In this document: piece by piece, positions 21,508 through 61,188 of the stretch
Numbering within the stretch: position 1 is the first letter of the stretch
How the letters are laid out: each line of letters opens with the position of its first letter
NCBI RefSeq assembly: GCF_963676685.1
Contig: NC_092354.1
Location: 73,098,001 to 73,162,000 of the forward strand
Length of the DNA stretch: 64,000 nt
From: Mytilus edulis
Lineage: Eukaryota
Direction of reading: 5' to 3'
The notes under the pieces: model-generated
Told to the model about the DNA's origin: nothing
What the model saw: the letters and a program-made list of their open reading frames with translations, nothing else
The model's database searches: none
Translations under genes and position numbers: made by a program

Positions 21508-24500
21508 CTGAAAGAAAAACCCAAAACAATTATTAAACAATTCATTTTAGATGACCAGACATGATTCATTGTATTACTTCACATTGTCTTATTGTTTAAC
21601 ATATGACAACGAATACTTTCCAAATGTCATAATCAATATTGTTCACTTTTACCCGAAGACAACTTATTATACTTAATACCGGGTTTGTTCTCACATTTAC
21701 AACACACATGATATCATATGTGGAAAAGGATTGCATAACCCTTCCCGTTCAACCCAATTTAATTTCGAGGGGTTTAGATTTTTGTTTTTTCTGTTGTGGT
21801 TTGTGTACTGTTGTCCATCTTTTGGTTTATTTATCTTTTGTTGCCAAGGCTCTGACACAAAAAATATAAAACAATTAATCTGGGAAAATTGAGGCCTAAC
21901 TGTTAGCAAAACAATTTCCAAAAACAAATATGACAGACAAGAACCAAAGACAACCACTGAAGTTCAGATTTCTGAATTGAGAGAGACACTCGAATATTAT
22001 TCGTCTGTAAAATTTTATCTGAAAAAAGGAATTTGTACGACGATTGGCGATGTCAATTAAAATTTAAATAGGAATGAGTTTTATCTACTGCAATTTAATT
22101 ATGAGGAGATCCTCACTTACTGTTTGGCGACACAATACAGAGTTTACGTTAGACCATTAAGATTACTAGCATACATAACGACAATCATTTAACAACATTC
22201 CCGATTGATTTGAATGCCGATTACATTGTACAATTTTGTGCAATCAATCTCAAACACATGGGCTTATTTGAGTATAAAATATTGTCAACAAACTGGTATT
22301 TTCTGCAGCAAAGCCATGGTAACTTACAAAATGTACGACATCTTTTTGAAATTACAGTTAATGAAAATATTTAACAATGACTTGTTTTTGGAATTGAGAC
22401 ATTTAATTCCATGACCACGTTCTTTGTACGTTTAAAACCTTTCACAATAACTACTGTGGATTCATTCATTTACGTGGATACCGATTGTCATGGTTTGAGG
22501 AAAAGTTGTAGTTTTGTGGATAAATAATTTCGTTGTCTGGCAACGAATGCATACATTCCCTTAGAAAATTCATAATTAGTTGATTTTAGGTTCCTCTGTT
22601 CCCACGGAATGCACAAGCATTGTCATCCAAAGAATAATAACGAATTCACAGTACTCAATGAGTAAAAAAGTGTTGTGTTTAATTGCGAAATTTGTGGTTT
22701 ATATCTATGCAGAAATCAGTTGTGCTTGACATTTATATAGAGAATTGCAGATATGAAACATAGATTTAACTTTAAAGCTAATGGAAATAAAAAGGAACTA
22801 TGAGGAAAATACAAATGGGTAGTTACATACCAAAACAATATTATTAAAGAAGGTTTCTTGTCATCTTCAATTCTTTAAATTGGAAACTTTGAAATCTAAT
22901 AAATGCATGACAATGTGTTATATTGTTACTAAAGTTATTCAGATAAGTTACTTTTGGGTTTTATTTAAAGAAAGCAATTGTTGAAATAAATCTGGCTTAC
23001 ACCTAGGCCTGATCTGAAAAATTTCGGTATGGTGATATATGATGCTTAACGTATACTGCATTATAATTGAGATTATTAAAATTTTATATTTTCAATAATC
23101 TGGTGTAATTCAATCAAATATTCGTGTGGGTGCGTGGGTGTTGCAGCCTGTAGATCATTGCCATATTTGGCATGGCCATAGCGGCGCTCGCAGCATGAAT
23201 GTCATGGACCATGGGGAAGAAAAGAAGAACGACCAGCAGGACAGGAGGAAAGAGATTGCAGCATGAAGAAATTGCCCAAAAAGAAAGACGGGGCTGGCCG
23301 GAGAAGAACTACCAGGAAAACAAAGAAGTCGGACACGTGGTGGCAGAAGTACCTGTGGAAACTGCTGATATCTCATCAGGTAATGAGTCAGAGGAGGATG
23401 AACGGGCATTACCCTCTTTAAGGCACGACCCGTTACACGAAGACTTTGAAATTGCAAATAATTCCATTGATTTCACTCCGTCAAAAGAATCTAGAGTTCA
23501 TGAAACAGTGGGGGAACACGTCCCTTTTTAAATTAAAGAAAATATTTCGAAGGGAAAGTTTATAGAGCTTCATTCTCTTTTGAGAATGCAGAAAGAAATG
23601 GAAGAGGTTGACGAGGGCGGTTTGGTTTGAAATTAAAAAGGGGGAAAATGTGCATTGAAAAAAGATCGTCGGGGGTTTGTTTGTCAATAAATGAATGGAC
23701 TTTAGCATTCATGATTTTTATGATTGTCTACATAGAGACATACAGCCCTCGAGCACAGGAAATGTTAAAATATATGCGCGATATCAGATTAGCGGCAATA
23801 AGGTCAGAAAACACGGTCAGCTATGACGAGCAATTTATGCTAAAAATAGAAAAGAATCCAAATGTATCTTGGGGAAATATACACGGTAAATATTGGCTAT
23901 TACACATCACATCTCCCACAGTTCATAACAGTGTGTCAAGGCAATCACAGGGTTATAGAACAACGACACAAAATCGTGGTAATTATAACTCAAATACACT
24001 TTCAAACAATAGAACACACCAACAATCACAGGTAACTAGTGGAAGTGTAAATATGTCATGTAAATACAATAATAATGGTAATGACCTTACTTCCCTCGTT
24101 GTAGGTTTAAACACATATGTGAAATATGCAGTGGCAAACACAGAAAGGCCCAATGGAATAACTGGGCCCAAGGAAAAAGTGACAAAAAGTATTAATTTTT
24201 ATTCATTAGGAAATACTCCACCTATAAAAGTATCAGTCTTGGAAAATAATTTAGAATTTTACCCACTTAACAATGTAGCACATGAAATTATATCTGGATT
24301 GAAATAAGGTTTTTCATTAAAATATTTTGGCTCTATAAAAATGCATTACAGCTACCCAAAATTTTTAAAGAAAAATTAATGAAGGAAGTTAAACTTGGTC
24401 GCATTGCTGGTCCTTTCAAATACCCACCTTTTCCCACACTTCAGGTATCACCAATGGGGCTAGTGCCAAAAAAGGATAGGGATTTCAGACTTATTCAACA

Positions 24501-24844
24501 TTTATCCTATCCTGAGAATAATTCAATAAACGATTGTATTGATAAAGATCAATGTTCAGTGTAGTACAGTTCAGTGGACGAAGCAGCATGTTTGATGAAT
24601 AGAAACAAAACATTTGCCCGATTATTAGTAAGTCAGTGTGACGTAAAAGCGGCTTTTCGTTTGTTTCCAATTACACCGCACGATTTTCATTTGTTGGGGA
24701 TAAAATTTCAGGGTGAATATTATCTTAATAAAATGCTCCCTATGGGAGCCTCAATAAGCTGTGCCATGTGGGAGAAATTTGCAAAAGCTTTGCATTGGAT
24801 AATACAGCTAAAAAGCGGAAATGATGATATCCTACATTATTTAG

Positions 24845-25262
24845 ATTGATTGATTGTTGGTTGCTTAACTTCCAGTGGCAAATATTTCATGCATATTCAG
24901 GACGAGAACAAGTTCACAATAAATACAATAGGTAGGTCTTGTCACAATAGAGGCAATCTGGGATGATGGTCGGGGAAATTTGGACTGCCACTGGAAAATA
25001 AGGGTTTTTTGGATAAGGACAGAAATTTTGCCTTGCAACAGGCCATCTACGGACCCCTCAAAGAGTTGTTGCAAGTGTTCTTGATCGTGGCACTCTCTTT
25101 ACACGAGACATTGGATTTAATGTCCCCATTCTGACCGGACGTGACTGCGAACTTCATACATCCCGCACAACCAAACGGACGCCCCACTTCAGCAAGCGTT
25201 TTACTGCCGGTCGGGAGAAGACCAAGTGACCATATTTCTATTCCCCAGTCACCCTTGGGGGC
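24845..25262 (-). mobile_element. SINE inserted into the Ngaro RT catalytic motif
   Basis: (aatc)n tail on the minus strand; 10-bp TSD cattatttag at 24835-24844 and 25263-25272. Confidence 0.75.
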
Positions 25263-25376
25263 CATTATTTAGCTGATTTGATTTTGTCGAGTCGAGCTAA
25301 TTATCAAAAGTTTGCAATGCTTTGAAGTTATTCTAAGAGGTGTGCAACAACATAAGGTACTCCTCTTGCTAGTGAC

Positions 25377-25860
25377 AATAAAATTGAGAATGGAAATGGG
25401 GAATGTGCCAAAGAGACAACAACCCGACATAGAAAAAAAAAACAACAGCAGAAGGTCACCAACAGGTCTTCAATGTAGCGAGAAATTCCCGCACCCGGAG
25501 GCGTCCTTCAGCTGGCCCCTAAACAAATATATACTAGTTCAGTGATAATGAACGCCATACTAATTTCCAAATTGTACACAAGAAATTAAAATTAAAATAA
25601 TACAAGACTAACAAAGGCCAGAGGCTCCTGACTTGGGACAGGCGTAAAATACGGCGGGGTTAAACATGTTTGTGAGATCTCAACCCTCCCCTATACCTCT
25701 AGCCAATGTAGAAAGGTAAACGCATAACAATACGCACATTTAAAATCCAGTCCAGGAAAAGTCCGAGTCTGATGTCAGAAGATGTAACCAAAGAAAATAA
25801 ACAAAATGACAATAATACATAAATAACAACAGACTACTAGCAGTTAACTGACATGCCAGC
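25377..25860 (-). mobile_element. Penelope-like 3'-end repeat inserted in the Ngaro pol
   Basis: Removing it restores PLASD|KTT..LMFLGIEFDT. Related fragments occur at ~30670-30760 and ~41555-41650. Confidence 0.7.
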
Positions 25861-28800
25861 AAGACTACTTCGCCGACTACATTACTTATGTTTTTGGGTA
25901 TAGAATTTGATACACAGAATTTTATCATGCGACTTCCAAAAACTCTCACAACAAATCAGAGATACCTTTGACAGTTCTAAAATAACTCTTAAAGATATGC
26001 AATCTCTTCTTAGACTCCTGATTTTTGCTTGTAAGGTAGTTGCTCCAGACCGCACCTTCTGTCGCAGACTCATAAATTCAACAATCGGGGTATGAAAATC
26101 GTATTACAAAATTCGAGTAAACAAGCAAATGAAAGCAGATTTAGAAGTTTGGTTAGACTTTTTAAAACAATATAATGGTGTCACTGTAATAAAAGACAAT
26201 GTATGGGTTTTGTAATGAAAAAAATAACTGATAGTGCAGGGGGATCCAAAGGCGGGTATGGGATCTATTTTGCAGGTCAGCCCAAGGCATATGTCCAAAA
26301 TATTGGGTTGAGACTGGAAATACAAGAGATATGACGTTGTTAAAGTTGTTTCCAGTTGTAGCTGCTCTTATGTCCTGGGAATCCTATTTTGTTAACAAAA
26401 AAGTTATTTTTCATGTTGATAATCAGGCGGTTGTTCAAATTATTAATATGAAAACTAGCAAATCAAGTAGAGTTATGACGTTAGTAAGACAGATGGTTTT
26501 ATGAACTTAAAAAATAATACATTAGTTAAGGCAATTTATATCCCTTCAAAACAAAACCAAATTGCTGATTGTCTTTCTCGTTCTTAGTGGGGGAAGTTCA
26601 GAAGCATAGCTCCAGAAACAAACCAGTGGCCAACCAAAATTCAAACACAGATCTGGAACATTTAAGTCAGGTAGCTGATTATATTGTCAATCAAGGTGTT
26701 TCCAAAAATACACAAAAATCATGCAATTTGGCTCTGTCAAAACTTTGCACTTTTAGATCATCTTATAAATTGAAACAGGATTGGCCTGTGCCAGTCAATG
26801 ATTTACTAAATTTTATAGCTTTTTTGACGGTACAGGGTCTTTTTTTTTGGGGGGGGACCATCTCATCTTATATATCAGGAGTTGCATACCATCATAAAAT
26901 TCAAGGGATACAGGATACAACCAAATTCTTTATAATTGGAAAGGCATTAGAAGGAATAAAAAGAATTCAAGGAGGAAAACGTAATGACATTAGAACACCA
27001 ATTACAGTGCAATTGTTATCAAATATGATAAGTTGTTTGGATAAAGTATGTAAGAATAAATATGAAGCTGCTTTATTTTCAGCAGTTTTTTCTGTTGCCT
27101 TCTTTGGTTTGCTAAGAGTAGGGGAAATCACTACTTCAAAATCCAAGTCTATTATAAATGGCTCCAACTTAACAATTTCTGATATTTTTAGTTAGGAAAA
27201 AAGTCCTGAAGCTAAGAGTAAGGTGGTCAAAAACTGACCAAAAAGTAAAGTCTGTTACTTTATTGATACCCGAGAACAGATAAAAAATACTGTCCGATAC
27301 GACTCATTAACATATATTTAAAGGTACGACCTACCTGTAACAATACAGATTTGTTTATCCATTATACTTGTATGCCTTTAACTAGATACCAATTCAGTAG
27401 TATACTGGAAAAAGCTTTACATTTTCTTCATATTAGTAAAGGTAATTTTAAGTCACATAGTTTTCGAATTGGGGGAGCCACGGAACTAGCTAGGCAGGGG
27501 GTGTCAGAGGAGGTAATTATGAGATTAGGCAGATGGAAATTGCATGCTTATTCTCGCTATATTAGGTTGCAATTTTTCTAGTTTCAAAAGGCTAACAAGC
27601 AACAGGTTTGCACAGGTCCCAACATTTCAATAACAATTTCCAAATTGTGACATATTCTTTAACATTAAATACCATAAACACTAATGAATTATTGTCTTAA
27701 ATCTTTATAGTATCTATTTCGGGTATTTTGTAGATTAAATGTAAGCATTATTATCTCAATATACTTTAAATGTGTTATACTTCCTTAACACCTAATAAAC
27801 TATTCTATATGTTACGCTTAATAATGGAATCAAAGGTGTTATTCAGAAGTCAAAAACAAAATACAATTTAGAGATTTAAGACAAATTGAAGAGGGATTTT
27901 TGACATTTTTTTATGTGCTTTCTATATAAATGTTATTATTTTGATGGAATTTAATCCTCAAGATTTAATCAGTAGTATTTTAGATAATAAAAGAGATTAG
28001 TGCATTTCTTTTTTTTTTTCGTTTCAGTCATAGTTCAAACGAGACAAAGTTATATGCTGCATTGTTTCAAAATTTGTAAAACAGCCCACTTACTTCCCTT
28101 GACCGTAAAAATTTGCCGTCTTTTCAATTAATGATATATATTTTTTAATTACCAAATATATAGGCCACAAAGTGTAAGGATGACAAGAAGCACATTTAAT
28201 AAAAAATAATGTCGTCCACATTTACTAATGATAAAGATATAAATGAGAAATTAATAAGGTACAAAATAAGGCAACAGTAGTATACCGCTGTTCAAACCGT
28301 TAAATGAATATCGATTTAAACAAAACACTAATCCAAACAGTATTGAAACCTGGTGCGTAAATTTGTTCATTTTGGAAATATACTACTAAACTTATAAAGG
28401 ACACATCGTTATTTTATCAAACTGTTCTATCGATTTCTATAAATATATCAACAAATACTGATTACACCTAACAAACCCCATGCTATGATTTGAATATAAA
28501 GGATCAATCAATATATACATTGTAACAAACAAGCAAATATTTCTTACATTTTGTTCTTCCTGTCATAGGAATAAGGTGAGATAACGACTTATAATTGTCT
28601 TCCTTTTTTGTGACTTGGATGTCTCATTAACACTCATACCGCATCTTCTTTATCTATTAACTTTAAATGTTAAAGAGATTGAAGATCGTGAATAGCTGTA
28701 CTTGAAATTTGAGGTCTTTGAATGTGTACAATATTTAATAAAAATGCTATATTACAGCATGTCAACGTACTTGTCTTTGGTACAGACATTATATTATGCG

Positions 28801-30264: not shown

Positions 30265-30343
30265 ATGACGTTACTCTATTATCTGCTTTTATTTTTTACA
30301 CTGAGAGTTTGTGACACTGAACAAACAGATCCACATACCATAA
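30265..30343 (+). CDS. Exon 1: signal peptide MTLLYYLLLFFTLRVCDTEQTDPHTI
   Basis: Acceptor ttgcag ending at 30247, ATG at 30265, hydrophobic core, donor gtgagt at 30344. Confidence 0.8.
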
Positions 30344-33300
30344 GTGAGTGATTTATTAAAAAATTGTATTTTAATTATTTTAATTTATTTTTTAAGATAC
30401 AGACCAAATTTTAAATAAAAAAGTGCAACATTGTTCACTTATTTACACAGACAAATATAGATACGAGAAAGGTGATACTGCACATCTACCTCTTTAATCT
30501 TATTTGTATGTTAAAGTGGTATTTTGGGATATTGGAATGTTTTATATTAGTTTGATTATTTCTATATTGTTTATCTATAACTTTATTATTGCAAAATATC
30601 TTATTGTTAATGTATTCATACAATAATTAATGAACTAAAATAGAAAAAAACATATGAAACATACAATATAATGACAGAGGCTCCTCATTTTGGACAGGCA
30701 CAAAAACATAATGGGGCAGGGTTAAACATGTTTTGTAAGATCTCAACCTCCCCCTATACAATTGCTTGCAAATGACAAATTAAGAGCAGCAAATACATCA
30801 AACGTAATAATAGCATAACGACTAATAAAAAAACAAACCGTTCAAAGTTGTCGTGTTTGAGGTTAACCAACCCTTGCAAAGAGATGAAAAAGTAGCAATG
30901 CATATGTTAGTACTATCATTAATAATAAAACAATTTAAAAAAGTGGTAATCGACAATGAGTTGAAAGGTCAACTTGTTCATACTATTTTACTTTTAAATT
31001 GACATTTTACTAAAATTATCAAACTGATGATAGTTATTTGCTTATTAAGTTTAAATCTTAGTTTTTCTACATATACACTACAGCTTGTATACAGATGATC
31101 GGATCTCTACAAAGTAAATATGGCAACTATAACATTACAATAAGAAGTCCGCATGTTCATGTTACCTGTGTAAACGACACTACACTGGTCGGAAGTAGTA
31201 ATGTCACGTGTAAAAATCAGAAGTGGCAACCAGATTTTCCTCATTGTTTAGTGAACTGTCCACCAATACCACCTTCACCGATCATTATTTCAGCGAATAC
31301 GCAATCTTATGTAAAGGTAAGATCATCACATCTAATATATAGTGAACACAATATCATTTAGAAAAGTTTATAACGTCTGCCGATCGAAGGGGATTAAGTT
31401 TGAAATTTAGCAATTTTATGGAATTTAGTGTAAATATAATAATAGAAATAATTTTGGCCGTACTATCTTAGATCGTTATTATAGCAGTGAGGCACCATTT
31501 TGTAAGTACACTCAGTCAAGCTTGTGTGATCGTCATAAACACTACAACTATAGTCATACGCATACAGTACAAATAACAATGCATTCAGACATATACCCTT
31601 CTCAGTCTTTTCGGCAAGATGCTGATGAAGGTGTTTATTTGGAATGTCAAGGTGAATACATACCATCCATTGTGAATATCATACTTAAGAAGTTGAATTG
31701 TAAGAAAATATACACACCTTCTGCAAGTCTAATGTTCTCCTTTTTAACATTGTTTTCAAGGCTAGCTACATTAGATATTTCCTTCAACCTTGTGGATAAT
31801 CTATCCGAAGCGTATTTGATTGATTCGTCATATAATTTATTGATTCATATTATAATTGCTACAAAACGTTATGTAGAAATAAAGTCCCCAATCAAATATA
31901 TGTATACAAGGATATATATTTCTACAAATGATATTAGCTGTGAATAGTCTAAAAGTGTACAATAGCAATTTATTCGATAATAGCAATAAAAAATGCGATT
32001 GATATATTTTAAATTTTCGAACTATATGTTTTAAAAAGGCTCCAGTGAAATAACGTAAAGTCAAGGCCCTTGTTAACCATAAATGAAATGTAAGGTATGT
32101 TCACAGCGCAACGTATACTATACTATAGCATAAAAATACGATGTATTTCAATACATGTTTGTTCAATTTTGTCCATTTCGAAATCCATCATAGTATTTTC
32201 GGTAAAACACGTGTTTTCCAATAATATTTTTAAATTATTATTAATTCAAAATTATAATAAAAATTGCAGATATGAAATCATTGCGTATGCTTAATCGGGG
32301 ATTAATTTATATGCTCCAGAATGAATCATCAGTTTCTGCTAAACAACTGATACCCATCATGTTGACCACGAAAATATACTGAAATGTATATCATTTCGGG
32401 GCCTTTTATAACTGACTATGTTGTATGGGGTTTGCTCATTGTTGAAGGCCATACAGTTTTTAATGTCTGATTAATTTGGTCTCTTGTGGAGGGATGTCTC
32501 ATTGGCAATCATACCAAAAATATTTTTTTTTTATATATGATTCAGATAGATCAAGATAAATAAAAATGGAATTAAAGAGATATGAAATTTTCAAAAATGA
32601 TGCAACTGTTTCGATATTTCAGACAAAAGACAGAAATCGATCAGCCGGTACAACTATTTCTCTTTCATGTATTACATCCGGGTTTATTGTAAATGGCTCG
32701 TCTAGAATTACATGTCAATCAGATAGATCTTGGAAACCTAACATTCCAAAATGCAGACGTTAGTATTTGATATTATGATTTGTTGTGTTGTTTATCCATT
32801 CGTTCTAATCTTATTCAGGGATATCAGTGTTGTCTTATTTACACATCCCCAAATGTGTAACCAAGAAGAAAATATAAATCATTTCAAGATAGAATTGATC
32901 AGCGATAAAATAAAGGAACTTTCTTGAATCGAACAAATTAAATATTTCTTAGAGGGAATTATAAGAATGACATTATGATAGATAAATGTTTTTTTGTAAA
33001 TACCAAAACTATATCATCATACACATATAAATATAACTAGAGGTCAACATAGGGTAACCGCAACACCCTTTCAACTCATAACAGTATGCATAGCTGCGTT
33101 TTGTTGCCCTTCTGGTACGCTCGAATAGAACACTTAAAACTGTGAATTTCTATAATTATATAGAAGTGTGTCAATCACCTATAGATAAAAAAAAATAGAT
33201 GCTGGATATATTTGAGAACGCTACTGTAAAAAACCCACAAAGGAAAATCTTTATTATTTTTGTATTTTTTTCAAAGCTATTCAAGGCCGTAAGTCAGACA

Positions 33301-36300
33301 GGTTTTCTTCGAAGACAACATTTTATGATAAAAGTAGATACTAACATATTTAAAAATAATACACATGTAGATCGAGGAAAATCTTCCACAATTTCGGAAT
33401 TTCACAAAAATGAAGTTCTGAAACTCCAATAAGGAATGAATTTCAAATTTTAAATGATTGTCCCTTTAATTTTCTACAGCTAAAAAGTTTCCACCAGAGA
33501 GACGATGGATGACGATCTTAGCTATAGCCGGTCCAGCAGCTTTAGTATTGGTAGTCTGTGTGATTGTTTTAGGAAAATTTTTGCTCAAACGAAGGTAATC
33601 ATTATATTAATTTTAATTATCTATATGAATAATTTGCAATATTGGTTAATTGATAATCCGGATTTTGATGGGTTTGTGATGCTCAGTCCTTTATTTTCAA
33701 TGTTGTGTGATATCTACCGTTCTTTGATGTTGATCTTTTTTGTTTATAGCCATAGCGTAGTCAGCTTTATTTCGAAATCGATGAATCCTTTTGATATTTA
33801 TGCCACTGTTTTTTAATATGATGGGAACATTATGTAGAAGATATTTATGATGTGGCTATGAACTAGCTTTTAGTAGTAGCAAGTATTCTTAAAAAAATAG
33901 ATACGTACTGTTTGTATTTTGTTTGTATGTCAGTTGTTTTTGTGCTACATGATAATTATATGACCCACACCATAACAGTTTTAGAATTAACTTTATTTTT
34001 GAACCACTGTAAAAAAAAAGGGGGATGGGTTACACTAAATTCTAAAGCTACTAAATTCGATATTTATCAATACTAAGTCAGGAGACTAATTAAATGGTTA
34101 CCGTTGGTTGCTGGTTGTTATTTTCATTTATTGTCACATATCGTAATCTGCGTTTGAAGCTCATTCATTTTCTTCGGGTTTTTTTTATCGTTATTCGTAT
34201 ATGAAAAATTCACTGACGGCATTTGAATATTATTCTTGTAATTAATTTGTTCATTATTAATATTTTTTTTATAAAATTTGAATTACATTATTAAATTTTG
34301 TGTAATGGTTACAACCTTTTTTTGTATAATTAATCGACTACACTTGACCTATGTGGGATTGTTGATTAATTGGCACTTCTTTTTTATGACGATTTATTTT
34401 TATTTATTTTAGACTGAAAAAATCAGAAATACAGGACGCTATACATCTATCACAGAAAAATGAAACAACGCCGTTTGTATTTTACTTTTTTTGTTATACT
34501 GACCGAAAAATGCTTGTATTATACAAGTGTTATGAAGTCGATATTAATGAATTAGTTGACGAAAGATAGTTTGTTCCTCAAATTAATAAAGCTTGCAGGA
34601 AAACATTCAAGATTTGAATTACTACAACTTTATCTTTATGCAGCTACCACTATTGGAGCAGGATCTACTACCCCATCTGGAGTGTCTGAAATCACTTGTA
34701 GCCTTTTGATTGGGTTCAAGTTTTATAACATAATATATTACATTATATAGACCCTACAGCCTTACAACAAATATGTTGAAAAATACATTTATCTCAAACA
34801 ATTATGTTGTTTGAACAAAAACAGAATGTTGGTTACCGTCTTGTATTTTTTTCTTAATCATCTTAAACGCATTTAGTTTTTTATAGAGATTCTCTTCTAC
34901 AACTGTTTTATATGGTTCAGATTTCAATTGATGCGCTCAAATATTTCATATTTAGTTTTTGAAACTTGTTTTCTCGCGACCCCCATAACGAAGTTTTCTA
35001 TAGATACACGTAAAGTTCATTATGGTATTTGATCATCAGTTTACAGTACATATTTGGTTAATATGAGTTTGATTTCAAATGTTTAGCACCATTTGTTATA
35101 ATCTTTATTACAGGAACTGTTTACCCTTCATGAACTTAAGGTTGATCACTTGGTTTAACCGTTGAATATATACTGAAGAAATTTTCTAAATACCGTGACG
35201 ACGTAGTCAAACATGTTTAATGTGAACAGAGTAAACAATTGATAAGTTCTAATTCTTTATTAAAAAAGGTTATCATTACAGGTTTTATAAAGTTTGGACA
35301 ATACGAAGGACACAAAAGAAAATGATTGAAGCTATAGATCTTTCTTCATTAAAAAATAAAGGTATATAAAAACGAATGTATATGATCACAAGTTAGGTTA
35401 AGTTTATTGATAGTTTTGCTGTGTTTCATAGCTTAATTCTACATTACGACGAGTGCCACACGTGGAACACACCTTAGCTTGCTTACACTACTGGAGCTCC
35501 GAAAATCAATACAGGTTTTGTTTGATTGCGTATAAACTCGGCTTTGAGCGTTATGGGACGTATACAATAAAGTGTTGTTTTTATTCTTTGCATACCAATC
35601 ACAAATGAAAAATGATAAATAGAAAGTGTGTTCCTGGTCCCTATTGTTACACGATTAAATACTATCGAATGCAAACACGTTCAGGCATTGTACGTTACAC
35701 AGAGAGAAACCACAGTTTTGCGAATAATACTATATAAATGTTAGTAGTACCACTGCAGAAAATATGGAGGTGGTTGTACATGCTACATACCAATAACGTC
35801 ATTCAAAGGTGTGTGTCCGTTTGGCAGCGGGCACACTATTCACACATGACTACGTAATTGAAAAATGGATGGAAGATACCACATAATTTTAAACAATTGA
35901 ATATATCTTTTAATAACATACATTTTTTTAATGTTCGGGCTTTTCATAGCTGACTTTACGATTATTTTGTTTCGTTTCTGAAGGACGTATCGTGATCTTT
36001 CATAGCCTACATTTACTTCGAACTTGACTAGATAGTTGAGTCACACGAAATCATACTACATACCACATATCCTTATTCTTATATTATACTTTAAACATTT
36101 ACACACACAAAGAAAAGGTTTCAAGTATTTTTTAAATGTCAAATATGGGATGATGACTAATTTGCATGAATGTTTCAGCAAGTAAAATGTTTAATATTCC
36201 ACAAGATAAATACTTGAAACTAGTACTAGAAGAAGATGGCTCAGAGATTCAAACAACGCCCTCTATGGTTCTTTGTCAAAAGAAAGTATTAATGGTTATA

Positions 36301-39300
36301 GATAGGAACGACAAATGGAAACCCGTATCATCAGATGAGAGTGAGAAAATAAGGTACACATATTTCATTACTATTATAATCTGTTTCTTTCCATGCACAT
36401 ACGATCGCAATAATTCAGTGTGGTTCGTTTTGTACAGTCTTTATATGATGTGTTTTTGACCTAATGTAAAAATTGTTCATGACAATAATACCACTCACAA
36501 GTATAAACAATACAAACATAAAAAAATGAAAAAGCAAATATACCATCACTTACAATTAAATCAAAAGCAGCACAGACTCCTATTTACAAAACTAGATACA
36601 AGCAGGTGTGTGTAATCAGTATTTATTCAAAACGAAAAATTAACACAACAACACTCAAACTAGAGGTCGACAATAAACTGTACATGTCTCCTTTCCGTTA
36701 TTTAAAGATCGATTGTAATTAAATCCTTTACTAAAAACACTAAATTTTTGATTGATCAGTGATAAGACGCCAAATGTATAGTAAGAGGATATGCAAGTAC
36801 CATTTCAATATCTTTTTGAAGCTCCTTTATAATATGGTATGCATTAAGAAACATGTCGGCATGAAAGGATCATAGTGTGCTCCAATGGCTATGCTATGTT
36901 GAAAAGAAGGCACAGGATGATAAGGATATATCAATTAATGAAAACATTAGACAATTGTGGTATTATTTAATGTAATACCGTGAATTTTTTTCACTCAACA
37001 GTTGTAACTGTGACGTACTTAATTTTTATCATGAAACATACACTGATCCCGTTGTCAAAACAATAATCTTTCAGATTAACCTACGATGTGTGTTCATTTG
37101 ATCGAAAGCAAAGAAAGTTATTTTTAGCAAACAGTTTAAAAGATCTGATAGACCAAGGTAAATAATAAATGTTAAATGATACTACAACAGATCTTCATTA
37201 CGACACAGAATGTGTTTTCTGCGATGCATCAACTACGAAGCATTTAGATAACCGAGCAGAGTAACTGTTGAGACAAAATCAAGACAATGGCAATACATAT
37301 TGGTCAACCAATACATGTAATGCATTATACATGTAATTTTGTTTTATTGTGCAAACTTAACTTCATTAATTGAAACAAGGTTAAAATGTTTGCCACTTTT
37401 TAATATCAAAGTCATTATAATTCAAACTACAATTATACGTTATAAAATCACAGTGCTTATCGACATGAAAAAACAACAGGAACTACGATATCAATATCTT
37501 CACGTTTATATCAGTAAATCTTTTCCTAGGTAAAAATAAACTATTCCGTATTTTAAGATGAATTTGTGTTTCTCTTAAAATATATATATTGAGCTGCATT
37601 TATATACATTTGTAGTACAACATATCTTTGAACAAGAAGATAATTATTTGTGTCTTGAGATGGACGGTACGGTAATTGATGATGATATTTCGCTGACTGC
37701 TGTTGCTGGGCAACAATTGATGTCAATGAATGAAACCACCGGGTGGCGATCAGTGAACCCCGGAGAGATAACGAAGAGTTTGTCTGAATTGAAAACTGAT
37801 GAGCAATCCAATGACAAAAAGTGAGTACATTTAAAGTCATACATTTTAAAGGTCATGTTAAAGTCGGATAATTAATAGATGTAGCTACATTGAAATACGT
37901 GTGTCAACTTTTGCCTGAATATTTCATGCAGACGATGGTAATTTCATTTATTTGTACTGTAGTCATGTCAAGTAATTATTTTATTTCAGTGTTATATTCA
38001 ACATTGCCATAAAAGCGCGAGGTTTAAATAGCCACAAAACAAGGTTTCACCCATCATTTTTTCTTAAAATGTCCTGTACGAAATCCGGAAAATGGCAGTT
38101 GTTATCTTACAATTCGTTTCTATGTGTGTTGCATTGACTTTTGTTCTTTGTTGTACTTAGTTTTTTTTGTTATGACGTTGTTTTCCTTTAATAGTTGATG
38201 TGTTTCCCACGGTTTTAGTTTGTAACCCGGATTTTTTTTTTCTTTCAATCGATTTATGACTTTCGAACAGCGGTATACTACTGTTGCCTTTAAATATTGT
38301 TTGTCTGAGACATATGAAAACGTATTAAGAAATTTGAGACATATTATATCGTAAAAGGAAATATGAGACATATAATATATTATAATGAAATTTGAAATAT
38401 ACTAATTTAATCGTATAAAGAAATACGAAAAATATTGTATTCATATAATTTAAGGAAATGGTGAAAACTGAACGTCATGATCCCATCGATAATCAATAGA
38501 TGTATCTGTATTAAAACATTGCTTGCGTCAACGTTTGTCTGAATATTTCATGCAGACGATGGCGCTCGATTAGTAAAAAAAAAAATCAAAGAGATTGACT
38601 GTGGCTAAGACATATATTCATCTGTCGGCTTTTGTAATTTTCTAACGAGTTTCATAGAGATGCACCTGTATGGCTTCACGGGTTTAAATAAAAACAAACC
38701 TTATTCCGTTTGCAATTATGAAGTTCAATAATTACAGTCAGTTATTTAGCTAAGCATAATTACTTGAATTAGTTTTTTTAAACAAATACTATCTTCAAAT
38801 TCTAATTGACGCTTTCAATTTCAGTCCGGGTATCTATGATGAGTTTATTTTCATATTTTTATTTTATTTTACAGAGATTGTTACAAAGTATGGTCAAAAG
38901 ACCTTCGTTATAAGAAAATAATATTTGCCAGTGATTTAGTTGATTTACATATAAAAGGTATACACTATTTAAGTATAAATTCTACCAATTACATAATAAC
39001 ATTGTAATGACAGATGCTATGATACAATCAAAGTCACGACGTGCACAGCATGTACAATTTAGACACATGTGTTTCCCGGCAAATGGAACGAGACGCAATG
39101 TAAGCTAATATTGTTAGGATGCACAAATTTCGAAATTAAACAATATATTTGCATAGTCTATATATATCACTACGTTTATGTTGAATACCTTTCAATTTCG
39201 AAACCAGGGACCTTAGTAGCGTGGTGGTATTGGTAGTCGAATGTCTGTATCTCTACCTTTCAACACGGAGTTTGATTCCAGCACTGGCAGATGCATTGTA

Positions 39301-40209
39301 ATTGAATTTTAATTGACTTGGACTGTCATATCCCTACATTTAAGTAAAGGCAACAACACTATATCTCTGTTCAAAAGTCATAAATCGATTGAGAGAAAAC
39401 GAATCCAGGTTACATACTAAAAGTGAGAGAATCACATCAAATATAAGAAGAAAACAACGAAAAAACAGAACACAGAAGTGCAAAAACAAACAAACAACAA
39501 TGCAAAATTCATAGAAACGAACTATAAGATAACAACTGCTATATTCCTGGCTTTGAACAATTCATTTTAAGTAAACGTGATGGGTTGAACCTGCTTTTGT
39601 GGTTATCCAAACATCCGCGATTTATGGCAATGTTTGATAAGCCGCGGGTTTATTTATAATCTTCCTCTCAAACCTACATACGAATATAATTTCTATTTCC
39701 CATAAATGTTTGAAATTGATAGTGCCTTGACAGTGAGGATACCATATACTTTTTATATTGCAATACGAAATAAGAGTAAAAAACATTAAAATTGATGTGC
39801 ATGTATTTGTCTGTTAGTTTATAAGTTTTCGACTATGACTGTATACATTTTAGAACTTTAATGTTTTACATGCTATAGTGATACTTTAAAAAATGGCTTC
39901 TTTGAAGATATTAAAGCAAACACAAATACGAACCAACATACACTTTATTCTTTTTATGATGCTACTTGGAATTTTTTTTTAGCTGCAAAGGCTTTGTGTC
40001 TGCAACCACCTATAGAAATATCTCTTTTGAATGATGATGTTCCAATATTTGATAATCAGCAACTCATACATCATAGAAAGGATATTTTGCTAGCAGTAGA
40101 AGCTGGTGATGCGTACAGTGTAGCTATGACGTCCGATTACACAGAAATTCCGGATGTACTCCAACAGACGCCATACAGACGGAATTATACGAATGACACG
40201 TACTTCTGA
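30265..40209 (+). CDS. Type I membrane protein: signal peptide - 2x Sushi/CCP - TM - 3x CIDE-N-like - Tyr tail (491 aa, 11 coding exons)
   Basis: Exons 30265-30343, 31084-31316, 32623-32758, 33480-33594, 34413-34472, 35282-35361, 36179-36353, 37075-37157, 37616-37820, 38875-38957, 39983-40209. All introns are GT-AG with compatible phases; total 1476 nt with no internal stop. Confidence 0.85.
31084..31316 (+). CDS. Exon 2: Sushi/CCP domain 1 and start of domain 2
   Basis: C..VHVTCVNDTTLVGSSNVTCKNQKWQPDFPHC then NCPPIP; tacag acceptor, gtaaga donor. Confidence 0.9.
32623..32758 (+). CDS. Exon 3: rest of Sushi/CCP domain 2
   Basis: GTTISLSCITSGFIVNGSSRITCQSDRSWKPNIPKC; ttcag acceptor, gttagt donor. 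Confidence 0.9.
33480..33594 (+). CDS. Exon 4: transmembrane helix
   Basis: WMTILAIAGPAALVLVVCVIVLG followed by basic KFLLKR; ctacag acceptor, gtaatc donor. Confidence 0.85.
35282..36353 (+). CDS. Exons 6-7: CIDE-N-like domain 1
   Basis: PFYKVWTIRRTQKKMIEAIDLSSLKNK|ASKMFNI..LKLVLEEDGSEI..VLMVIDRNDKWKP. Confidence 0.8.
37075..37820 (+). CDS. Exons 8-9: CIDE-N-like domain 2
   Basis: RLTYDVCSFDRKQRKLFLANSLKDLIDQ|VQHIFE..YLCLEMDGTVIDDD..LMSMNETTGW. Confidence 0.85.
38875..40209 (+). CDS. Exons 10-11: divergent CIDE-N-like domain 3 and Tyr-rich C-terminus
   Basis: CYKVWSKDLRYKKIIFASDLVDLHIK|AAKALCLQPPIEISLLNDDVPIFDNQQL..ILLAVEAGDAY, then SDYTEI..TYF-stop. Confidence 0.75.
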
Positions 40210-45920: not shown

Positions 45921-46212
45921 CATATTTCTTTAGTTTGCGGAGTTTGAAGGACTTACTAATTTGATTAATTAAGACAGACACATGAACAGACGACGGGGCT
46001 TTGTTTTAAATTTTGTACTGCTTATTAAGTCAGGTAAACGGTATGCAAATTTTGCCATTTAGCATTCGTTGTACTAGAAATTATGAATATTGCATGACTG
46101 TCTGGACCAAAAAGTCTAAGAAAGTACTTTGGCTTTCGATGACAGTTTAGTATCACACAACACGAACAACAGCAAAGAATTAAAAAAAAATGTCGCCTAA
46201 CAAAGATTAATT

Positions 46213-46516
46213 TGTTCTGTCGAATAATTGTCAATTATTTACTATCACTTCAAAACCTTTTTATTAATCACGTCGGCCTTACATTCCACAGCAGCCACAT
46301 CAAAATAATATCACGTGTTTGTTTTTGTTCTCATCTCATTGTTAAATTTCTTGATCTGCGGCATATCACGGAGTGAGTAATTAATTAATTTAATTTGCAA
46401 TTATCACAAATGTATTTTTGTTCATTTGCGTTTCAGTTCATTATTCATTTTATTTACCTTGATTAAGAGTTTTCATTGTTCGTTTTTGTTACACAACACA
46501 AACATACACATTCACA
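46213..46516 (+). repeat. BEL/Pao 5' LTR
   Basis: tgttctgtcg...cattcaca, roughly 90% identical to 53752-54053 (by-eye estimate). Confidence 0.9.
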
Positions 46517-49500
46517 TAAAGTAAAATATCCCCGCTTAAAGGCAATTCAGCATGTCCGAATCAGACGATTCGTCAACATCACGTTCCAGAACGTTCAACA
46601 AGAAAGGACAACAACATTTTGAGGATAAATATTCCAAACGAAACAAACACAAATGCAAGGCATATGATCAAACAGCAGACCACCTTCATCATTTTAAGTA
46701 AAATACTTATAGACTTAGCAACGCGACAAATTAAAAATCGAATCAATGATATAGCATTCGAAGAAAGATCAATAATTTTATCAAGCAGTTCAAAATCATC
46801 ATTAAGATCATCTACAAGTTTTCGCCAAAGTCAAATGAGCTCAGTCATATCACGAACAAGAGCAAAAGCAAAAGTAGCAACAACAAGATTAAAGTTTGTA
46901 GAATAAGACCTACCGGAAGCCAAACGCGAAGCTGGCGCAGCAGAAGCAGAAGTTGATGCATTATCAAAATCTCCGGAATCGTCAGGAACGTAAGTTAAAT
47001 ATGAATTGAACATACAATCAGAGCCATTGGATGCAAAAGCTCGGACTAAGACATACGTTCAACTATTAAACTCGGCAAAACAAGATGTGCAAACTGGAGA
47101 CACACATAACAACCAACATATTGAATCTTCATACCGTGTAACTGAGACAAATTTGGACCCGAGGGTCGAACCCTTTCTTTCGTCACAGTCAGTAGCAGGT
47201 GACTTTACTCGATATCTGTTGCAAAAAGATCTGCTTCTCTAAAGACTTTCACAGTTTGATGACCGACCAGAGACATATCTCACACGGAAAACGTCTTTCC
47301 GTGCTGTCATGAAAGAATTAAAAGTTACACCAATGAAGGAATAAGATTTCTTAGTTAAATGGACAGGTCAAGAATCAAAACGACACGTCATAAGCATCAA
47401 ATCCGTCAACGCATCAAATCCCTCTATAGATCTAAGCCGATAGGGGCAACGTCTCGAAGAACGATATGGATATCCCGAAATGTTAGAAGCGTCATTAAAA
47501 CGGAGAGTTGAACAGTTTCCGAAATTAACTATAAAAGACAACAAGAAATTGTTCGAATTGTATGATCTTGCATCAGAAATCGATTCAATCAAGAGTATGG
47601 AAAACATGAAACCCCTTCATGGTCAATATGATTCATCAATCGGAGTTAAACCAATGGTGAATAAATTACCACATAGTCTTCAGGAAAAATGGACCACAAC
47701 AGCTGTTAGATACATGAACTATAATGATGTAGCCTATCCTCCATTTGGTGACTTTGTAGAATTTTACCGAGATCAGAGTCGTATCAAAACTAACCCAAGC
47801 TTCTTTAACGAAACAACACCATTCAAGAAAGAAAACAATTTTCAGAAGCGACCCGAAAGAAACACTCACATACACGTCAAGAAGACTGAGACAACGGACC
47901 CACATAAACCTTTATCTCTATCTGATAATAACTCCACCAAACAGAAATGTTCGCTTCATCTTACTGAATACTCGTTGAACAAATGTAGAGTTTTTAGAGC
48001 CAAGCCCATCGGTGAGAGAAATAAATTTATTAAGGAGAAGACAATCTGCTTTAAATGTCATACATTAAACTGTAAGAACGTTGTTCGTTGCAAGGAATGT
48101 AATAACATCCACCTTATGTACACGTCGATCATACTCATGTGAATTCTTCTACACAACAAACTCAGGACCGTCTGAAAATCAAACAGATCACGGAGGGGAG
48201 TACTCTATCTGGTACAGCTAAGGCATTATGCACTCGCATTTGTGGAGGGTTTTCAGGAAAATCATGCTCAAAGATCATTTTAGTCAATGCATTTTTAAAA
48301 GACAAACCAGAGAATGTTGTAAGTCTCTACGTTATGATCGACGATCAGAGAAACATGACTCTTGCTAGTTCTATTTGATATGTTGGCAGTTGAAGGAGAT
48401 GAAACAGAATATACACTGGTATCATGCTCAGGTAAAGTCCGTTCCACTTGGAGGAGATATAATGGTTTAGTTGTTGAATCTATCGACCGATCAGTTCAAC
48501 TTGATATGCCTTATGTGATAGAATGTGAAAATTTACGTGACAATCGGAATGAAATTCCAACGCCAGAAGTTGCAGAGAGTTTCTATCACTTCCAAGATAT
48601 TGCGCATCATATCCCACAGCTAGACAATGAGGCCCATATTATGATGCCTATAGAACGAGACGTCATTTCAGCACATCACGTACTAAACTAACGTATTGGT
48701 TTAGCTAATCCTTCGTATGCACAGAAACTACGTCTCGAATGGTGTATCATCGGGGAAAGCTGTCTAGGTAACGTCCACATGCCAAAGGAATTAAGAGTCA
48801 ACAAAACCAATATCCCTGAAAATGGAAGACCAACACTGTCTGATCCTTGTAATAACCAAAGAAAATTGAAAGAAATAGTACATGATGTCTTCGAACAGAA
48901 AGACGACGATAATAAACCTGGGTTATCAATTGAAGACAGACCATTTTTGAACATGATGGACTCAAGTTTTCGCAAAAACGAAAATGGAAATTGGAGCTGT
49001 CCGTTGCCCTTTAGGCACAATAGGTCGAACATTTTGAACAATTACGAACACGTGAAGAGCAATTGTACTAGAAAAGTCATTACGAAAAGATCAAATGAAA
49101 AGAGAACATTTTCTAGAGTTCATGGAGACCATTTTTTCAAACGGTCATGCCGAAAATGCACCACCTTTACCAAACGACACAGAAGGTTGGTATCTCCCAA
49201 TATTTGGAGTATACCACCATCATAAGAACGACAAAGTCCAAGTGGTTTTTGACTCGGCAGCAAAATGCAATGGATTATCCTTAAATAACGTGCTACTACC
49301 TGGACCAGATCTACCAATAGTCTATTGGGAATATTGCGTCGATTCAGACTCGAACCGGTAGCTGTTGTTGCAGACATTCAACAGATGTTTTATAGCTTCA
49401 AAGTCGATGAACATCACAGAGATTATTTAAAGTTCTTATGGCATGAACAAAATGACATCAACAAACCACTTACAGAATATCGAATGTGCGTCCACATTTT

Positions 49501-51862: not shown

Positions 51863-52131
51863 AGCTCATCGTCTTTCATTATGGCATTAAAACGATTCAC
51901 AGCAATACGAGGTCCAGTGAGTCATTTTAGATCTGATAGAGGAACAAACTTCGTAGACACTATCAAAGAATTAGAGATACAAGCAATCAAAGTCGAGGAT
52001 AATCGAATGAAAGAGTTTCTTCGTAATCAAGGAACAACTTGGCAGTTCAACCTGCCTCACGATTCTCATATGGGAGGTGTCTGGGAAAGAGTTTTTGGCA
52101 TAACAAGAAGAATACTAAATTCGCTAATAAT

Positions 52132-61126: not shown

Positions 61127-61188
61127 TCTACCTGCTGTAAAAGGTTTGATATCAGAGACACCCGCTAAACTTACCTGTTTAGCATAAT

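What the first reader, a model, noticed from the sequence alone, without database searches (positions are those of the whole stretch)
30265..40209. Candidate new receptor class: Sushi-Sushi-TM with three cytoplasmic CIDE-N domains
Seen: 11 GT-AG exons splice in phase into an uninterrupted 491-aa protein, most of it missed by the ORF track. It has a signal peptide, two CCP/Sushi modules, one TM helix and three repeats with CIDE-N hallmarks (Y-K/D-V-W/C...RK..A..L..L, then LVLEEDGSEI / LCLEMDGTVIDDD, then LM...W). Established: CIDE-N is the homotypic interaction domain of soluble or lipid-droplet proteins (DFF40/CAD, DFF45/ICAD, CIDEA/B/C, Drosophila Drep) and assembles through charge-complementary surfaces; CCP modules are extracellular complement/adhesion domains. 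Inference: this could be a surface receptor that uses CIDE-N the way death receptors use death domains, recruiting CAD/ICAD-like proteins and linking outside signals to DNA fragmentation or lipid-droplet control. I do not know this architecture from the literature, but I could not search.
Basis: partly seen in the sequence, partly recalled or inferred. Interest (0 to 1): 0.93.

Follow-up and report, generated by a model that had tools for sequence, protein, structure and literature searches.

The report
Mussel membrane receptor with CIDE-N tail
A real, transcribed blue-mussel gene encodes a single-pass membrane protein with two complement-type Sushi modules outside and three CIDE-N domains inside. 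CIDE-N is so far known only from soluble DNA-fragmentation and lipid-droplet proteins. The layout is conserved in mussels, oysters and scallops, is labelled "uncharacterized" in databases, and was not described in any paper I could find.

Summary
The eleven GT-AG exons at 30265-40209 (+) add up to 1476 nt. They encode, residue for residue, the 491-aa database protein XP_071140834.1, "uncharacterized protein [Mytilus edulis]".

RNA contigs from three studies carry six of the ten splice joints. A single 1164-nt contig links Sushi exon 3, the TM exon, exon 5 and the exons of the first two CIDE-N repeats, E6-E9.

Pfam finds Sushi x2 (40.8 bits) and CIDE-N x3 (94.9 bits). In an AlphaFold model, repeats 1 and 2 superpose on solved CIDE domains at Z 13.4-14.0, clearly above generic ubiquitin folds. 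Repeat 3 matches repeat 1 profile-to-profile at 98%.

The same plan (signal peptide, Sushi or Cys-rich ectodomain, TM, three CIDE-N) occurs in other Mytilus species, Saccostrea, Argopecten and unnamed transcripts. Within Mytilus the ectodomain is 65-94% identical (mostly 65-79%) and the tail 80-99%.

Nine full-text searches found no paper on this architecture. So the gene is annotated but the family is undescribed.

Its function is only inferred: a receptor that signals by head-to-tail CIDE-N assembly. A self-association prediction gave no verdict.

The parts
30265..30343 (+). Exon 1: start codon and hydrophobic N-terminal signal-like segment (P0014 residues 1-26, phase-1 donor CATAA|gtgagt)
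   Evidence: Its translation is an exact substring of P0014. The signal peptide is inferred from the sequence; no predictor was available.
31084..31316 (+). Exon 2: Sushi module 1 (Cys28, 55, 69, 81) and the first third of Sushi module 2 (Cys85)
   Evidence: Pfam Sushi 16.6 bits on the exon alone. Exact match to P0014 residues 28-104. PDB sequence matches to CR2, CR1 and factor H.
32623..32758 (+). Exon 3: the rest of Sushi module 2 (Cys120, 135, 148)
   Evidence: Pfam Sushi 30.8 bits, above the cut-off of 20.7. RNA joint 32758|33480 in three runs. Model pLDDT about 75-81.
33480..33594 (+). Exon 4: stalk, transmembrane helix (about residues 159-182) and basic stop-transfer stretch KFLLKRR
   Evidence: Kyte-Doolittle 19-residue maximum 3.02. 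Modelled as a helix from 158. RNA joints on both sides.
34413..34472 (+). Exon 5: 60-nt juxtamembrane cassette (residues 188-208), absent from the M. coruscus model
   Evidence: RNA joints 33594|34413 and 34472|35282 in three runs. P0002 joins exon 4 directly to exon 6.
35282..35361 (+). Exon 6: CIDE-N repeat 1, N-terminal half (FYKVW...R..KK)
   Evidence: Pfam CIDE-N profile positions 2-29, 15.6 bits. RNA joint 35361|36179.
36179..36353 (+). Exon 7: CIDE-N repeat 1, C-terminal half (LVLEEDGSEI ... W)
   Evidence: Pfam CIDE-N positions 29-76, 22.1 bits. Model residues 206-284 on the DREP2 CIDE domain, Z 13.4, rmsd 1.5 over 79 residues.
37075..37157 (+). Exon 8: CIDE-N repeat 2, N-terminal half (TYDVCSFDRKQRK)
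   Evidence: Pfam CIDE-N positions 4-29, 17.7 bits. RNA joints 36353|37075 and 37157|37616.
37616..37820 (+). Exon 9: CIDE-N repeat 2, C-terminal half (CLEMDGTVIDDD ... W) and linker
   Evidence: Pfam CIDE-N positions 37-72, 16.4 bits. Model residues 293-367 on FSP27 CIDE-N, Z 14.0, rmsd 1.1 over 75 residues.
38875..38957 (+). Exon 10: CIDE-N repeat 3, N-terminal half (CYKVWSKDLRYKK)
   Evidence: Pfam CIDE-N positions 3-43, 19.5 bits. The loose end of an RNA contig after 37820 reads the first bases of this exon.
39983..40209 (+). Exon 11: CIDE-N repeat 3, divergent C-terminal half (EDGT motif lost), conserved C-terminal tail ending D-T-Y-F, and stop codon
   Evidence: No Pfam hit on the exon alone, but the third CIDE-N stretch is found in the full protein. 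hhalign of repeat 3 against repeat 1 gives 98.2% over 71 columns. Model pLDDT is 74-87 with the same strand/helix order as repeats 1 and 2.

Best explanation
This is a type I membrane protein of the blue mussel. From N to C terminus it has a signal peptide, two Sushi/CCP modules facing outward (or into the lumen), one transmembrane helix, a 26-residue basic juxtamembrane segment, three tandem CIDE-N domains in the cytoplasm, and a short tail ending in a conserved Tyr-Phe.

Shown here: the gene, its splicing, the domain content, the CIDE-N fold, and conservation of the whole plan across pteriomorph bivalves.

Inferred: the fast-evolving Sushi part binds an external ligand (a microbial or self surface, or a complement-like factor). 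Ligand-driven clustering raises the local concentration of the tails. The CIDE-N domains then polymerise head to tail through their basic and acidic faces, as solved CIDE domains do. The resulting platform recruits cytosolic CIDE-N proteins, such as the mussel DFF40/DFF45 pair or the many CIDE-N-only proteins of this genome.

The three repeats are not equivalent:
- Repeat 1 keeps both charged motifs.
- Repeat 2 has Asp in place of the first basic Lys but keeps the full acidic DGT-x-IDDD motif.
- Repeat 3 keeps the basic motif but has lost EDGT.

This division of labour is conserved from mussel to scallop. It suggests a polar, pre-assembled seed rather than three redundant copies.
For: - One spliced RNA carries the Sushi, TM and CIDE exons in three studies.
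- The model is identical to RefSeq protein P0014.
- Pfam finds CIDE-N at 94.9 bits in 3 stretches and Sushi at 40.8 bits in 2 stretches.
- Solved CIDE domains are the best structural matches: Z 13.4-14.0 against 9.9 or less for other ubiquitin-like folds.
- hhalign of repeat 3 against repeat 1 gives 98.2%.
- The TM helix has a Kyte-Doolittle maximum of 3.02. The ectodomain has 8 Cys in the 4+4 Sushi pattern and 5 N-glycosylation sequons.
- The same plan occurs in Saccostrea, Argopecten and unnamed transcripts. 29 columns are invariant, nearly all at CIDE-N motif positions.
- The three repeats have position-specific signatures that are conserved across species.
- Within Mytilus the ectodomain is 65-94% identical (mostly 65-79%) and the three CIDE-N repeats 80-99%.
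- The genome encodes DFF40 and DFF-C exons and at least 41 CIDE-N exon matches.
- Head-to-tail, charge-driven, concentration-dependent filament formation is the published common behaviour of CIDE domains (PMC8647176, read).
- Bivalve receptor-like proteins with apoptosis adaptor domains in the tail have a precedent: Cys-rich ectodomain, TM, DED and TRADD-N in Crassostrea (PMC8195603).
Against: - There is no experimental or computed evidence of any interaction. The self-association prediction for two tails gave no verdict.
- Topology and surface location are inferred. No signal-peptide or topology predictor was available, and both flanks of the TM helix are basic.
- Sushi module 1 was not modelled with confidence (pLDDT under 50).
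- Repeats 2 and 3 each lack one of the two canonical charged motifs, which could equally mean they no longer polymerise.
- The tissue and conditions of expression are unknown. One raw-read RNA run (about 6% of it read) had no reads on the exons.
- The ectodomain-versus-tail contrast is confounded by tandem paralogues and possible exon exchange.
Confidence: 0.5

Rival explanations
1. Membrane-anchored sink or regulator. The tail holds DFF40/DFF45-like or other CIDE-N proteins at a membrane and keeps them from acting, or releases them on cleavage. It would be a decoy, not a signal-initiating receptor.
For: CIDE-N pairs such as ICAD and CAD are inhibitory in the established pathway. Repeats 2 and 3 each lack one charged motif, so they could cap a filament rather than extend it. 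The genome holds many CIDE-N genes to regulate.
Against: A rapidly diversifying ectodomain on a strongly conserved tail is more typical of ligand-sensing receptors than of a passive anchor. No caspase site or release mechanism was looked for or seen.
Confidence: 0.15
2. Non-apoptotic scaffold at cell contacts. The Sushi modules mediate adhesion or ligand capture, and the CIDE-N tail organises a submembrane complex, as Drosophila Drep-2 does at synapses.
For: Drep-2 is a CIDE-N protein with a synaptic, non-apoptotic role (PMC4229683, abstract listed). Sushi modules occur in adhesion and neuronal receptors, for example the weak PDB match to the GABA-B receptor. The extreme C-terminus (D-x-Y-F/Y) is conserved and could be a docking motif.
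Against: There are no expression data by tissue. The C-terminal motif was not tested against any binding domain.
Confidence: 0.15
3. Internal-membrane protein in lipid-droplet biology. The Sushi end lies in the ER lumen, and the CIDE-N tail contacts CIDE-like proteins on droplets, as vertebrate CIDEA/B/C act at droplet contact sites.
For: The best sequence and structure matches of repeats 1 and 2 include FSP27/CIDEC. NCBI's pipeline named the neighbouring paralogue 'lipid transferase CIDEC-like'.
Against: No CIDE-C region was found: Pfam gives no other family in P0014. According to PMC2426694, CIDE-C exists only in vertebrates. Glycosylated, disulfide-rich, fast-evolving Sushi modules point to an exposed surface. 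The NCBI name is automatic.
Confidence: 0.08
4. No function of its own: a lineage-specific exon-shuffling product, or a read-through of two genes, that is transcribed but not used.
For: Two neighbouring copies look partial (E1-E4 only, and E1-E10 without a last exon). Expression appears low.
Against: The frame is intact over 11 exons. One RNA contig spans the Sushi-TM-CIDE boundary in three studies. The architecture and repeat-specific residues are conserved between mussels, oysters and scallops.
Confidence: 0.04

Closest known systems
CIDE-N (CAD) domain proteins: DFF40/CAD, DFF45/ICAD, CIDEA/B/C (FSP27), Drosophila Drep1-4
   Same: The same domain family by Pfam (94.9 bits) and the same fold (Z 13-14 to DREP2, DREP3, Drep4, FSP27, CIDE-A and the CAD/ICAD complex). 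The basic FKVW/R..KK and acidic EDGT/DD motifs are recognisable.
   Different: All described members are soluble or droplet-associated, with one CIDE-N plus a nuclease, inhibitor or CIDE-C part. This protein has a signal peptide, Sushi modules, a TM helix and three tandem CIDE-N domains, and no DFF40, DFF-C or other Pfam domain.
Death receptors (Fas/TNFR1 type) and Toll/IL-1 receptors
   Same: The same logic by analogy: an extracellular binding part, one TM helix, and a cytoplasmic homotypic-assembly domain that forms open-ended oligomers.
   Different: P0014 has no TNFR, Death or TIR domain. CIDE-N is a ubiquitin-like beta-grasp, not a six-helix bundle. Its published filaments are salt-sensitive and dynamic (PMC8647176). 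The resemblance is functional inference only.
Bivalve receptor-like apoptosis-adaptor proteins (Cys-rich ectodomain, TM, DED and TRADD-N in Crassostrea; Kaur et al. 2021, PMC8195603)
   Same: A lineage-specific bivalve family with a Cys-rich ectodomain, one TM helix and cell-death adaptor domains in the tail. The ectodomain is variable between close species.
   Different: The adaptor domain is different (CIDE-N x3 instead of DED plus TRADD-N). The family is small, not 50 or more copies. In that paper CIDE appears only once, as the name of the DFF40-like nuclease.
Short Sushi-domain membrane proteins (complement receptor/regulator type, IL-2R-alpha/IL-15R-alpha type)
   Same: One or two CCP modules next to a single TM helix. 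The best sequence matches of the ectodomain are CR2, CR1, factor H and CD46.
   Different: Those proteins have short tails, or tails without assembly domains. No complement-binding function can be read from two divergent CCP modules.

Membership tests
CIDE-N domain family (Pfam PF02017) | Profile match above the curated cut-off (23.5 bits) | tested here: met
   P0014 scores 94.9 bits in 3 stretches. The exon halves match profile positions 2-29/29-76, 4-29/37-72 and 3-43.
CIDE-N domain family (Pfam PF02017) | Ubiquitin-like alpha/beta roll fold superposable on solved CIDE domains | tested here: met
   Repeat 1 on DREP2: Z 13.4, rmsd 1.5 over 79 residues. Repeat 2 on FSP27: Z 14.0, rmsd 1.1 over 75 residues. 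Repeat 3 was not searched alone. It shows the same strand/helix order at pLDDT 74-87, and hhalign gives 98.2% to repeat 1.
CIDE-N domain family (Pfam PF02017) | Opposed basic and acidic faces that drive head-to-tail assembly | tested here: inconclusive
   Tested at sequence level only. Repeat 1 keeps both motifs. Repeat 2 has Y-D-V in place of Y-K-V but keeps DGT-x-IDDD. Repeat 3 keeps YKVW/KK but has LLNDDV in place of LEEDGT. Surface charges were not computed.
CIDE-N domain family (Pfam PF02017) | Homotypic binding to other CIDE-N domains | not testable with these tools
   Complex prediction with two copies of the tail returned no verdict. This needs biochemistry.
Sushi/CCP/SCR module (Pfam PF00084) | Profile match above the cut-off (20.7 bits), with four Cys and a conserved Trp in each module of about 60 residues | tested here: met
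   40.8 bits in 2 stretches. Cys28/55/69/81 and Cys85/120/135/148. PDB sequence matches to CR2 at E 2.6e-25. Only module 2 was modelled with confidence.
DFF40/CAD and DFF45/ICAD | C-terminal nuclease domain (PF09230) or inhibitor domain DFF-C (PF09033) after the CIDE-N | tested here: not met
   Neither family is found in P0014 at E up to 0.1. Both are encoded elsewhere in the genome, on C13 and C97.
Vertebrate CIDE proteins (CIDEA/B/C) | One CIDE-N followed by a CIDE-C region that targets lipid droplets | tested here: not met
   After repeat 3 only 31 residues remain. No further Pfam family is found. CIDE-C is reported only in vertebrates (PMC2426694).
Death receptors (TNFR superfamily with death domain) | TNFR Cys-rich repeats outside and a death domain inside | tested here: not met
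   P0014 has no TNFR or Death family hit. Only the general layout is alike.
Type I single-pass membrane receptor | Cleavable signal peptide, one TM helix, N-terminus out | tested here: inconclusive
   There is one hydrophobic core with a KD maximum of 3.02 at residues 158-189, and a hydrophobic N-terminus MTLLYYLLLFFTL. Homologues have the same features. No signal-peptide or topology predictor was available, and there is no experiment.

The most novel reading that the evidence does not exclude
CIDE-N is a receptor-proximal signalling domain. A family of bivalve surface receptors senses ligands with fast-evolving Sushi modules. It uses a polar triplet of CIDE-N domains as a ready-made seed that nucleates filaments of cytosolic CIDE-N proteins. 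This would couple outside recognition directly to CAD/ICAD-type DNA fragmentation or to another CIDE-N effector. It would add a fold (a ubiquitin-like beta-grasp) to the short list of receptor assembly domains such as Death-fold, TIR and RHIM.
Probability: 0.22. Interest if true: 0.85.

Novelty: new variant of a known kind. Interest (0 to 1): 0.62.

Why it matters
CIDE-N is textbook-bound to two settings: the CAD/ICAD nuclease switch and lipid-droplet fusion. A conserved family that places three CIDE-N domains behind a transmembrane helix and a variable Sushi ectodomain would show that animals also use this filament-forming module at membranes. That would parallel the use of death domains and TIR domains.

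It would give cell-death and innate-immunity researchers a concrete, testable case of how a domain moves from an effector complex to a receptor. It would also give bivalve immunologists a new candidate receptor family in species known for transmissible cancers and mass mortalities.

The practical finding is modest but useful. A set of "uncharacterized protein" entries in mussels, oysters and scallops can now be named as one family with a defined architecture and repeat-specific signatures.

Tried and rejected
1. My own first exon 1 donor (30310, 480 aa) was rejected in favour of 30343, which matches P0014 and the orthologous models.

2. A whole-library phmmer search with exon 7 also returned long fungal-type NACHT/HET proteins (P0003-P0006, P0010, P0011). 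Pfam shows that these are DUF7104 short repeats matching only about 20 residues of the query. They are not relatives.

3. Complex prediction on two copies of the tail (residues 205-465) gave no verdict: score 0.00, controls not run. This is neither for nor against binding.

4. The ESM Atlas search with the whole protein gave no usable hit. With the tail alone it gave only single-domain CIDE-N clusters.

5. The profile search with alignment A1 added little: one further transcript (P0020) and partial models. The word index limits its reach, so the family's taxonomic range is a lower bound.

The organisms behind the unnamed transcripts P0007, P0013, P0016 and P0020 therefore stay unknown.

7. P0013 and P0016 found nothing in this genome at E 1e-6, meaning 'not found with this query'.

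8. The search of earlier findings had no note near this place and none on CIDE. Two Sushi notes elsewhere in the genome did not bear on this finding.

9. The raw-read run X21 (about 6% read) put no reads on the exons, only on an intronic repeat. That is too shallow to say anything.

10. The exons were searched one by one by reference. The full-length analyses used the database protein P0014, which was shown piece by piece to equal the spliced product.


Full report
**What is there**

The region lies in AT-rich (about 31% G+C) animal DNA. The window is G000:C11:73098001-73162000 of a 1.37-Gb assembly.

On the + strand, stop-free blocks with GT/AG borders give eleven exons. I first chose a weak donor for exon 1 (30310).

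Each of the nine split codons encodes the P0014 residue at that position. The total is 1476 nt, which is 491 codons plus stop.

P0014 is XP_071140834.1, "uncharacterized protein [Mytilus edulis]". That step is left out. All full-length analyses used P0014 by its id.

**Is it one transcript?**

I laid window 32600-38599 against contigs of three RNA runs from three studies, plus one raw-read run. Six GT..AG joints appear in all three contig runs: 32758|33480, 33594|34413, 34472|35282, 35361|36179, 36353|37075 and 37157|37616.

One 1164-nt contig (X1, record 1) carries exon 3 (Sushi), exon 4 (TM) and exons 5-9, and runs on at both ends. A 972-nt contig of X6 continues after 37820 with the first bases of exon 10.

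The architecture is real at the RNA level.

The joints E1/E2, E2/E3 and E10/E11 were outside the single 6,000-base call. They rest on the RefSeq model, on equal-length models in M. galloprovincialis, and on the contig lengths.

The runs are labelled RNA by guess for X1 and X2 and by record for X6. Intron-free contigs with canonical splice borders are themselves the evidence that they are RNA. The raw-read run (6% read) had no reads on the exons.

**Domains**

Exon by exon, Pfam gives these matches:
- Sushi on exon 2 (16.6 bits) and exon 3 (30.8 bits).
- CIDE-N halves in the right order: exon 6 at profile positions 2-29, exon 7 at 29-76, exon 8 at 4-29, exon 9 at 37-72, and exon 10 at 3-43.

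On P0014, Pfam gives CIDE-N at 94.9 bits in three stretches and Sushi at 40.8 bits in two.

Other features of P0014:
- One strongly hydrophobic segment (residues about 159-182, KD maximum 3.02), followed by KFLLKRR.
- Eight ectodomain cysteines in the 4+4 Sushi pattern.
- Five N-x-S/T sequons in the ectodomain.

The PDB sequence search matches the ectodomain to CR2, CR1 and factor H, and the repeats to CIDE-3/FSP27, CIDE-A, CIDE-B and DREP3.

An AlphaFold2 model built on a nine-sequence alignment has pLDDT 74-87 over the three repeats and about 75-81 over Sushi 2. Sushi 1 is unmodelled.

VIA-align places repeat 1 (206-284) on the DREP2 CIDE domain (Z 13.4, rmsd 1.5 over 79 residues). It places repeat 2 (293-367) on FSP27 CIDE-N (Z 14.0, rmsd 1.1 over 75). 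Drep4, DREP3, CIDE-A and the CAD/ICAD complex follow, and generic ubiquitin-like folds start at Z 9.9.

Repeat 3 could not be searched alone. It has the same strand-strand-helix-strand-helix-strand order. It also matches repeat 1 profile-to-profile at 98.2% over 71 columns.

**Gene structure**

Each repeat is two exons split by a phase-1 intron at the same domain position (about profile position 29). The repeats are separated by phase-2 introns. This is the pattern expected from tandem duplication of an exon pair. Other CIDE-N genes of this genome are split at the same place.

**Relatives**

A whole-library phmmer search with exon 7 found the M. coruscus protein CAC5401758.1 (P0002, 471 aa, the same plan without the exon 5 cassette) and an unnamed transcript, P0007.

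Searches with P0002 and with the tail of P0014 added these proteins:
- Mytilus californianus, M. galloprovincialis and M. trossulus.
- Saccostrea echinata and S. cucullata.
- Argopecten irradians.
- Further unnamed transcripts.

All the full-length ones have a hydrophobic N-terminus, a Sushi-like or Cys-rich ectodomain, one TM helix and three CIDE-N stretches. Some also have long unstructured C-terminal extensions.

One transcript family (P0013, P0020) has a different Cys-rich ectodomain before the TM helix and three canonical CIDE-N domains (172.9 bits).

The alignment has 29 invariant columns, nearly all at CIDE-N motif positions. The C-terminal end D-x-Y-F/Y is conserved.

The three repeats keep their own signatures in every species of the Sushi-type family; only the Cys-rich transcript P0013 departs from them:
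- Repeat 1: [FY]-K/R-V-W ... R..KK ... LVLEEDG[ST].
- Repeat 2: RLT[YF]DVC.FDR..RKL ... CLE.DGT.IDDD.
- Repeat 3: [YF]KVW..D...K[KR] ... DLH[IL]KA, with EDGT lost.

The triplet is therefore old, predating the split of mussels, oysters and scallops, and its members have specialised.

**Ectodomain against tail**

Within Mytilus the Sushi modules are 65-94% identical to P0014 (mostly 65-79%; only M. trossulus is higher). The three CIDE-N repeats are 80-99% identical.

Part of this contrast may come from paralogues. Two upstream tandem copies exist on C11. One, at 73,047,201-73,055,924, has exons 1-10 and no last exon in the next 10 kb. The other, at 72,990,667-72,996,069, has exons 1-4 only. The M. 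galloprovincialis model has an ectodomain nearer to the first of these copies.

The pattern fits a diversifying binding part on a constrained signalling part, but it needs a proper codon analysis.

**Mechanism**

Established knowledge is that CIDE domains bind one another through opposed basic and acidic faces. They form open, salt- and concentration-dependent head-to-tail helical filaments. This has been proposed as their unified mechanism (PMC8647176; also PMC7156525, listed).

The mussel genome encodes a DFF40 nuclease gene, a DFF-C exon and at least 41 CIDE-N exon matches. A mussel Dff-A with the EDGT and VDDxxYF motifs has been cloned (PMC3634015).

My inference is that clustering of the receptor concentrates the tails. 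The tails then assemble and recruit cytosolic CIDE-N proteins. The unequal repeats suggest a polar seed.

None of this was shown. The only interaction prediction I ran gave no verdict.

The rivals are a membrane sink for DFF-type proteins, a non-apoptotic scaffold in the manner of Drep-2 (PMC4229683), an internal-membrane or lipid-droplet role, and a transcribed but unused shuffling product.

**Comparison and novelty**

The protein is a member of the CIDE-N and Sushi domain families by tested criteria. It is not a DFF40, DFF45 or CIDE A/B/C protein, because their defining C-terminal parts are absent. It is not a death receptor, because it has no TNFR or Death domains.

The nearest conceptual precedent is the oyster receptor-like family with a Cys-rich ectodomain, TM helix, DED and TRADD-N (PMC8195603).

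Nine full-text searches over about 8.4 million papers found no description of CIDE-N with a TM helix or with Sushi, nor of tandem CIDE-N domains. The 2008 survey of CIDE-N evolution lists only DFF-type proteins in invertebrates and does not mention membranes (PMC2426694).

The library lacks most subscription journals, and I could not query InterPro. "Undescribed" is therefore a bounded claim.

The gene itself is not new. It is annotated in RefSeq, and orthologues sit in UniProt as "Sushi domain-containing protein". What is new is recognising these entries as a conserved receptor-like family with a CIDE-N triplet.

**Verdict**

- Observation: confirmed.
- Interpretation: partly supported. The architecture holds; the function is inferred.
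- Novelty: new variant of a known kind.
- Interest: 0.62.

Noticed in passing
window 38078-38292 (intron 9): A short dispersed repeat. RNA contig depth jumps to about 660-1500 (against about 9-25 on the exons), with many variant letters, loose ends on both sides and non-canonical 'joints'. It looks like a highly copied, transcribed SINE/MITE-like element, not part of the gene.
   Followed up: no
window 58311-62466, minus strand: Three long ORFs (389, 669 and 425 aa) of a retroelement. Pfam finds reverse transcriptase, RNase H and a phage-integrase SAM-like domain (tyrosine recombinase type), so it looks DIRS-like. I observed it only and did no reconstruction.
   Followed up: partly
G000:C11:73047201-73055924 (L001) and C11:72990667-72996069 (L003), 81 and 137 kb upstream of the gene: Two tandem relatives. 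L001 has exons 1-10 (58-97% identical) but no last exon in the following 10 kb. RefSeq models it as a 163-aa 'lipid transferase CIDEC-like' protein that starts in the TM helix. L003 has only exons 1-4 (Sushi-Sushi-TM).
   Followed up: partly
G000:C11:77497181-77502670 (L007): A more distant locus on the same strand with a Sushi exon, a TM-like exon and the two halves of one CIDE-N domain, 30-50% identical to family members. It may be a single-CIDE-N relative of the same receptor plan.
   Followed up: partly
G000: C11:24.70, 24.76, 32.05, 47.01, 60.55 Mb; C1:5.78; C2:73.80; C7:87.87; C9:80.09 Mb (L004-L006): At least nine copies of a two-exon CIDE-N unit have identical Pfam scores (46.5 and 20.4 bits). 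Three copies that I fetched share 4.6-5.7 kb at 98.8-99.1% identity across different chromosomes. This is either a recently spread repeat carrying a CIDE-N gene or very recent duplications. Other ORFs in the element have no Pfam match.
   Followed up: partly
window 22000-27500 and 46000-52000: Stretches with higher G+C (0.35-0.39) than the rest of the window contain ORFs of 148-226 aa. The three I scanned have no Pfam match. Their nature is unknown.
   Followed up: partly
window 34413-34472 (exon 5): A 60-nt in-frame cassette encodes the juxtamembrane segment. It is present in all three RNA contig sets here and in M. californianus and an unnamed transcript, but absent from the M. coruscus model. 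This may be alternative splicing or a model difference.
   Followed up: partly
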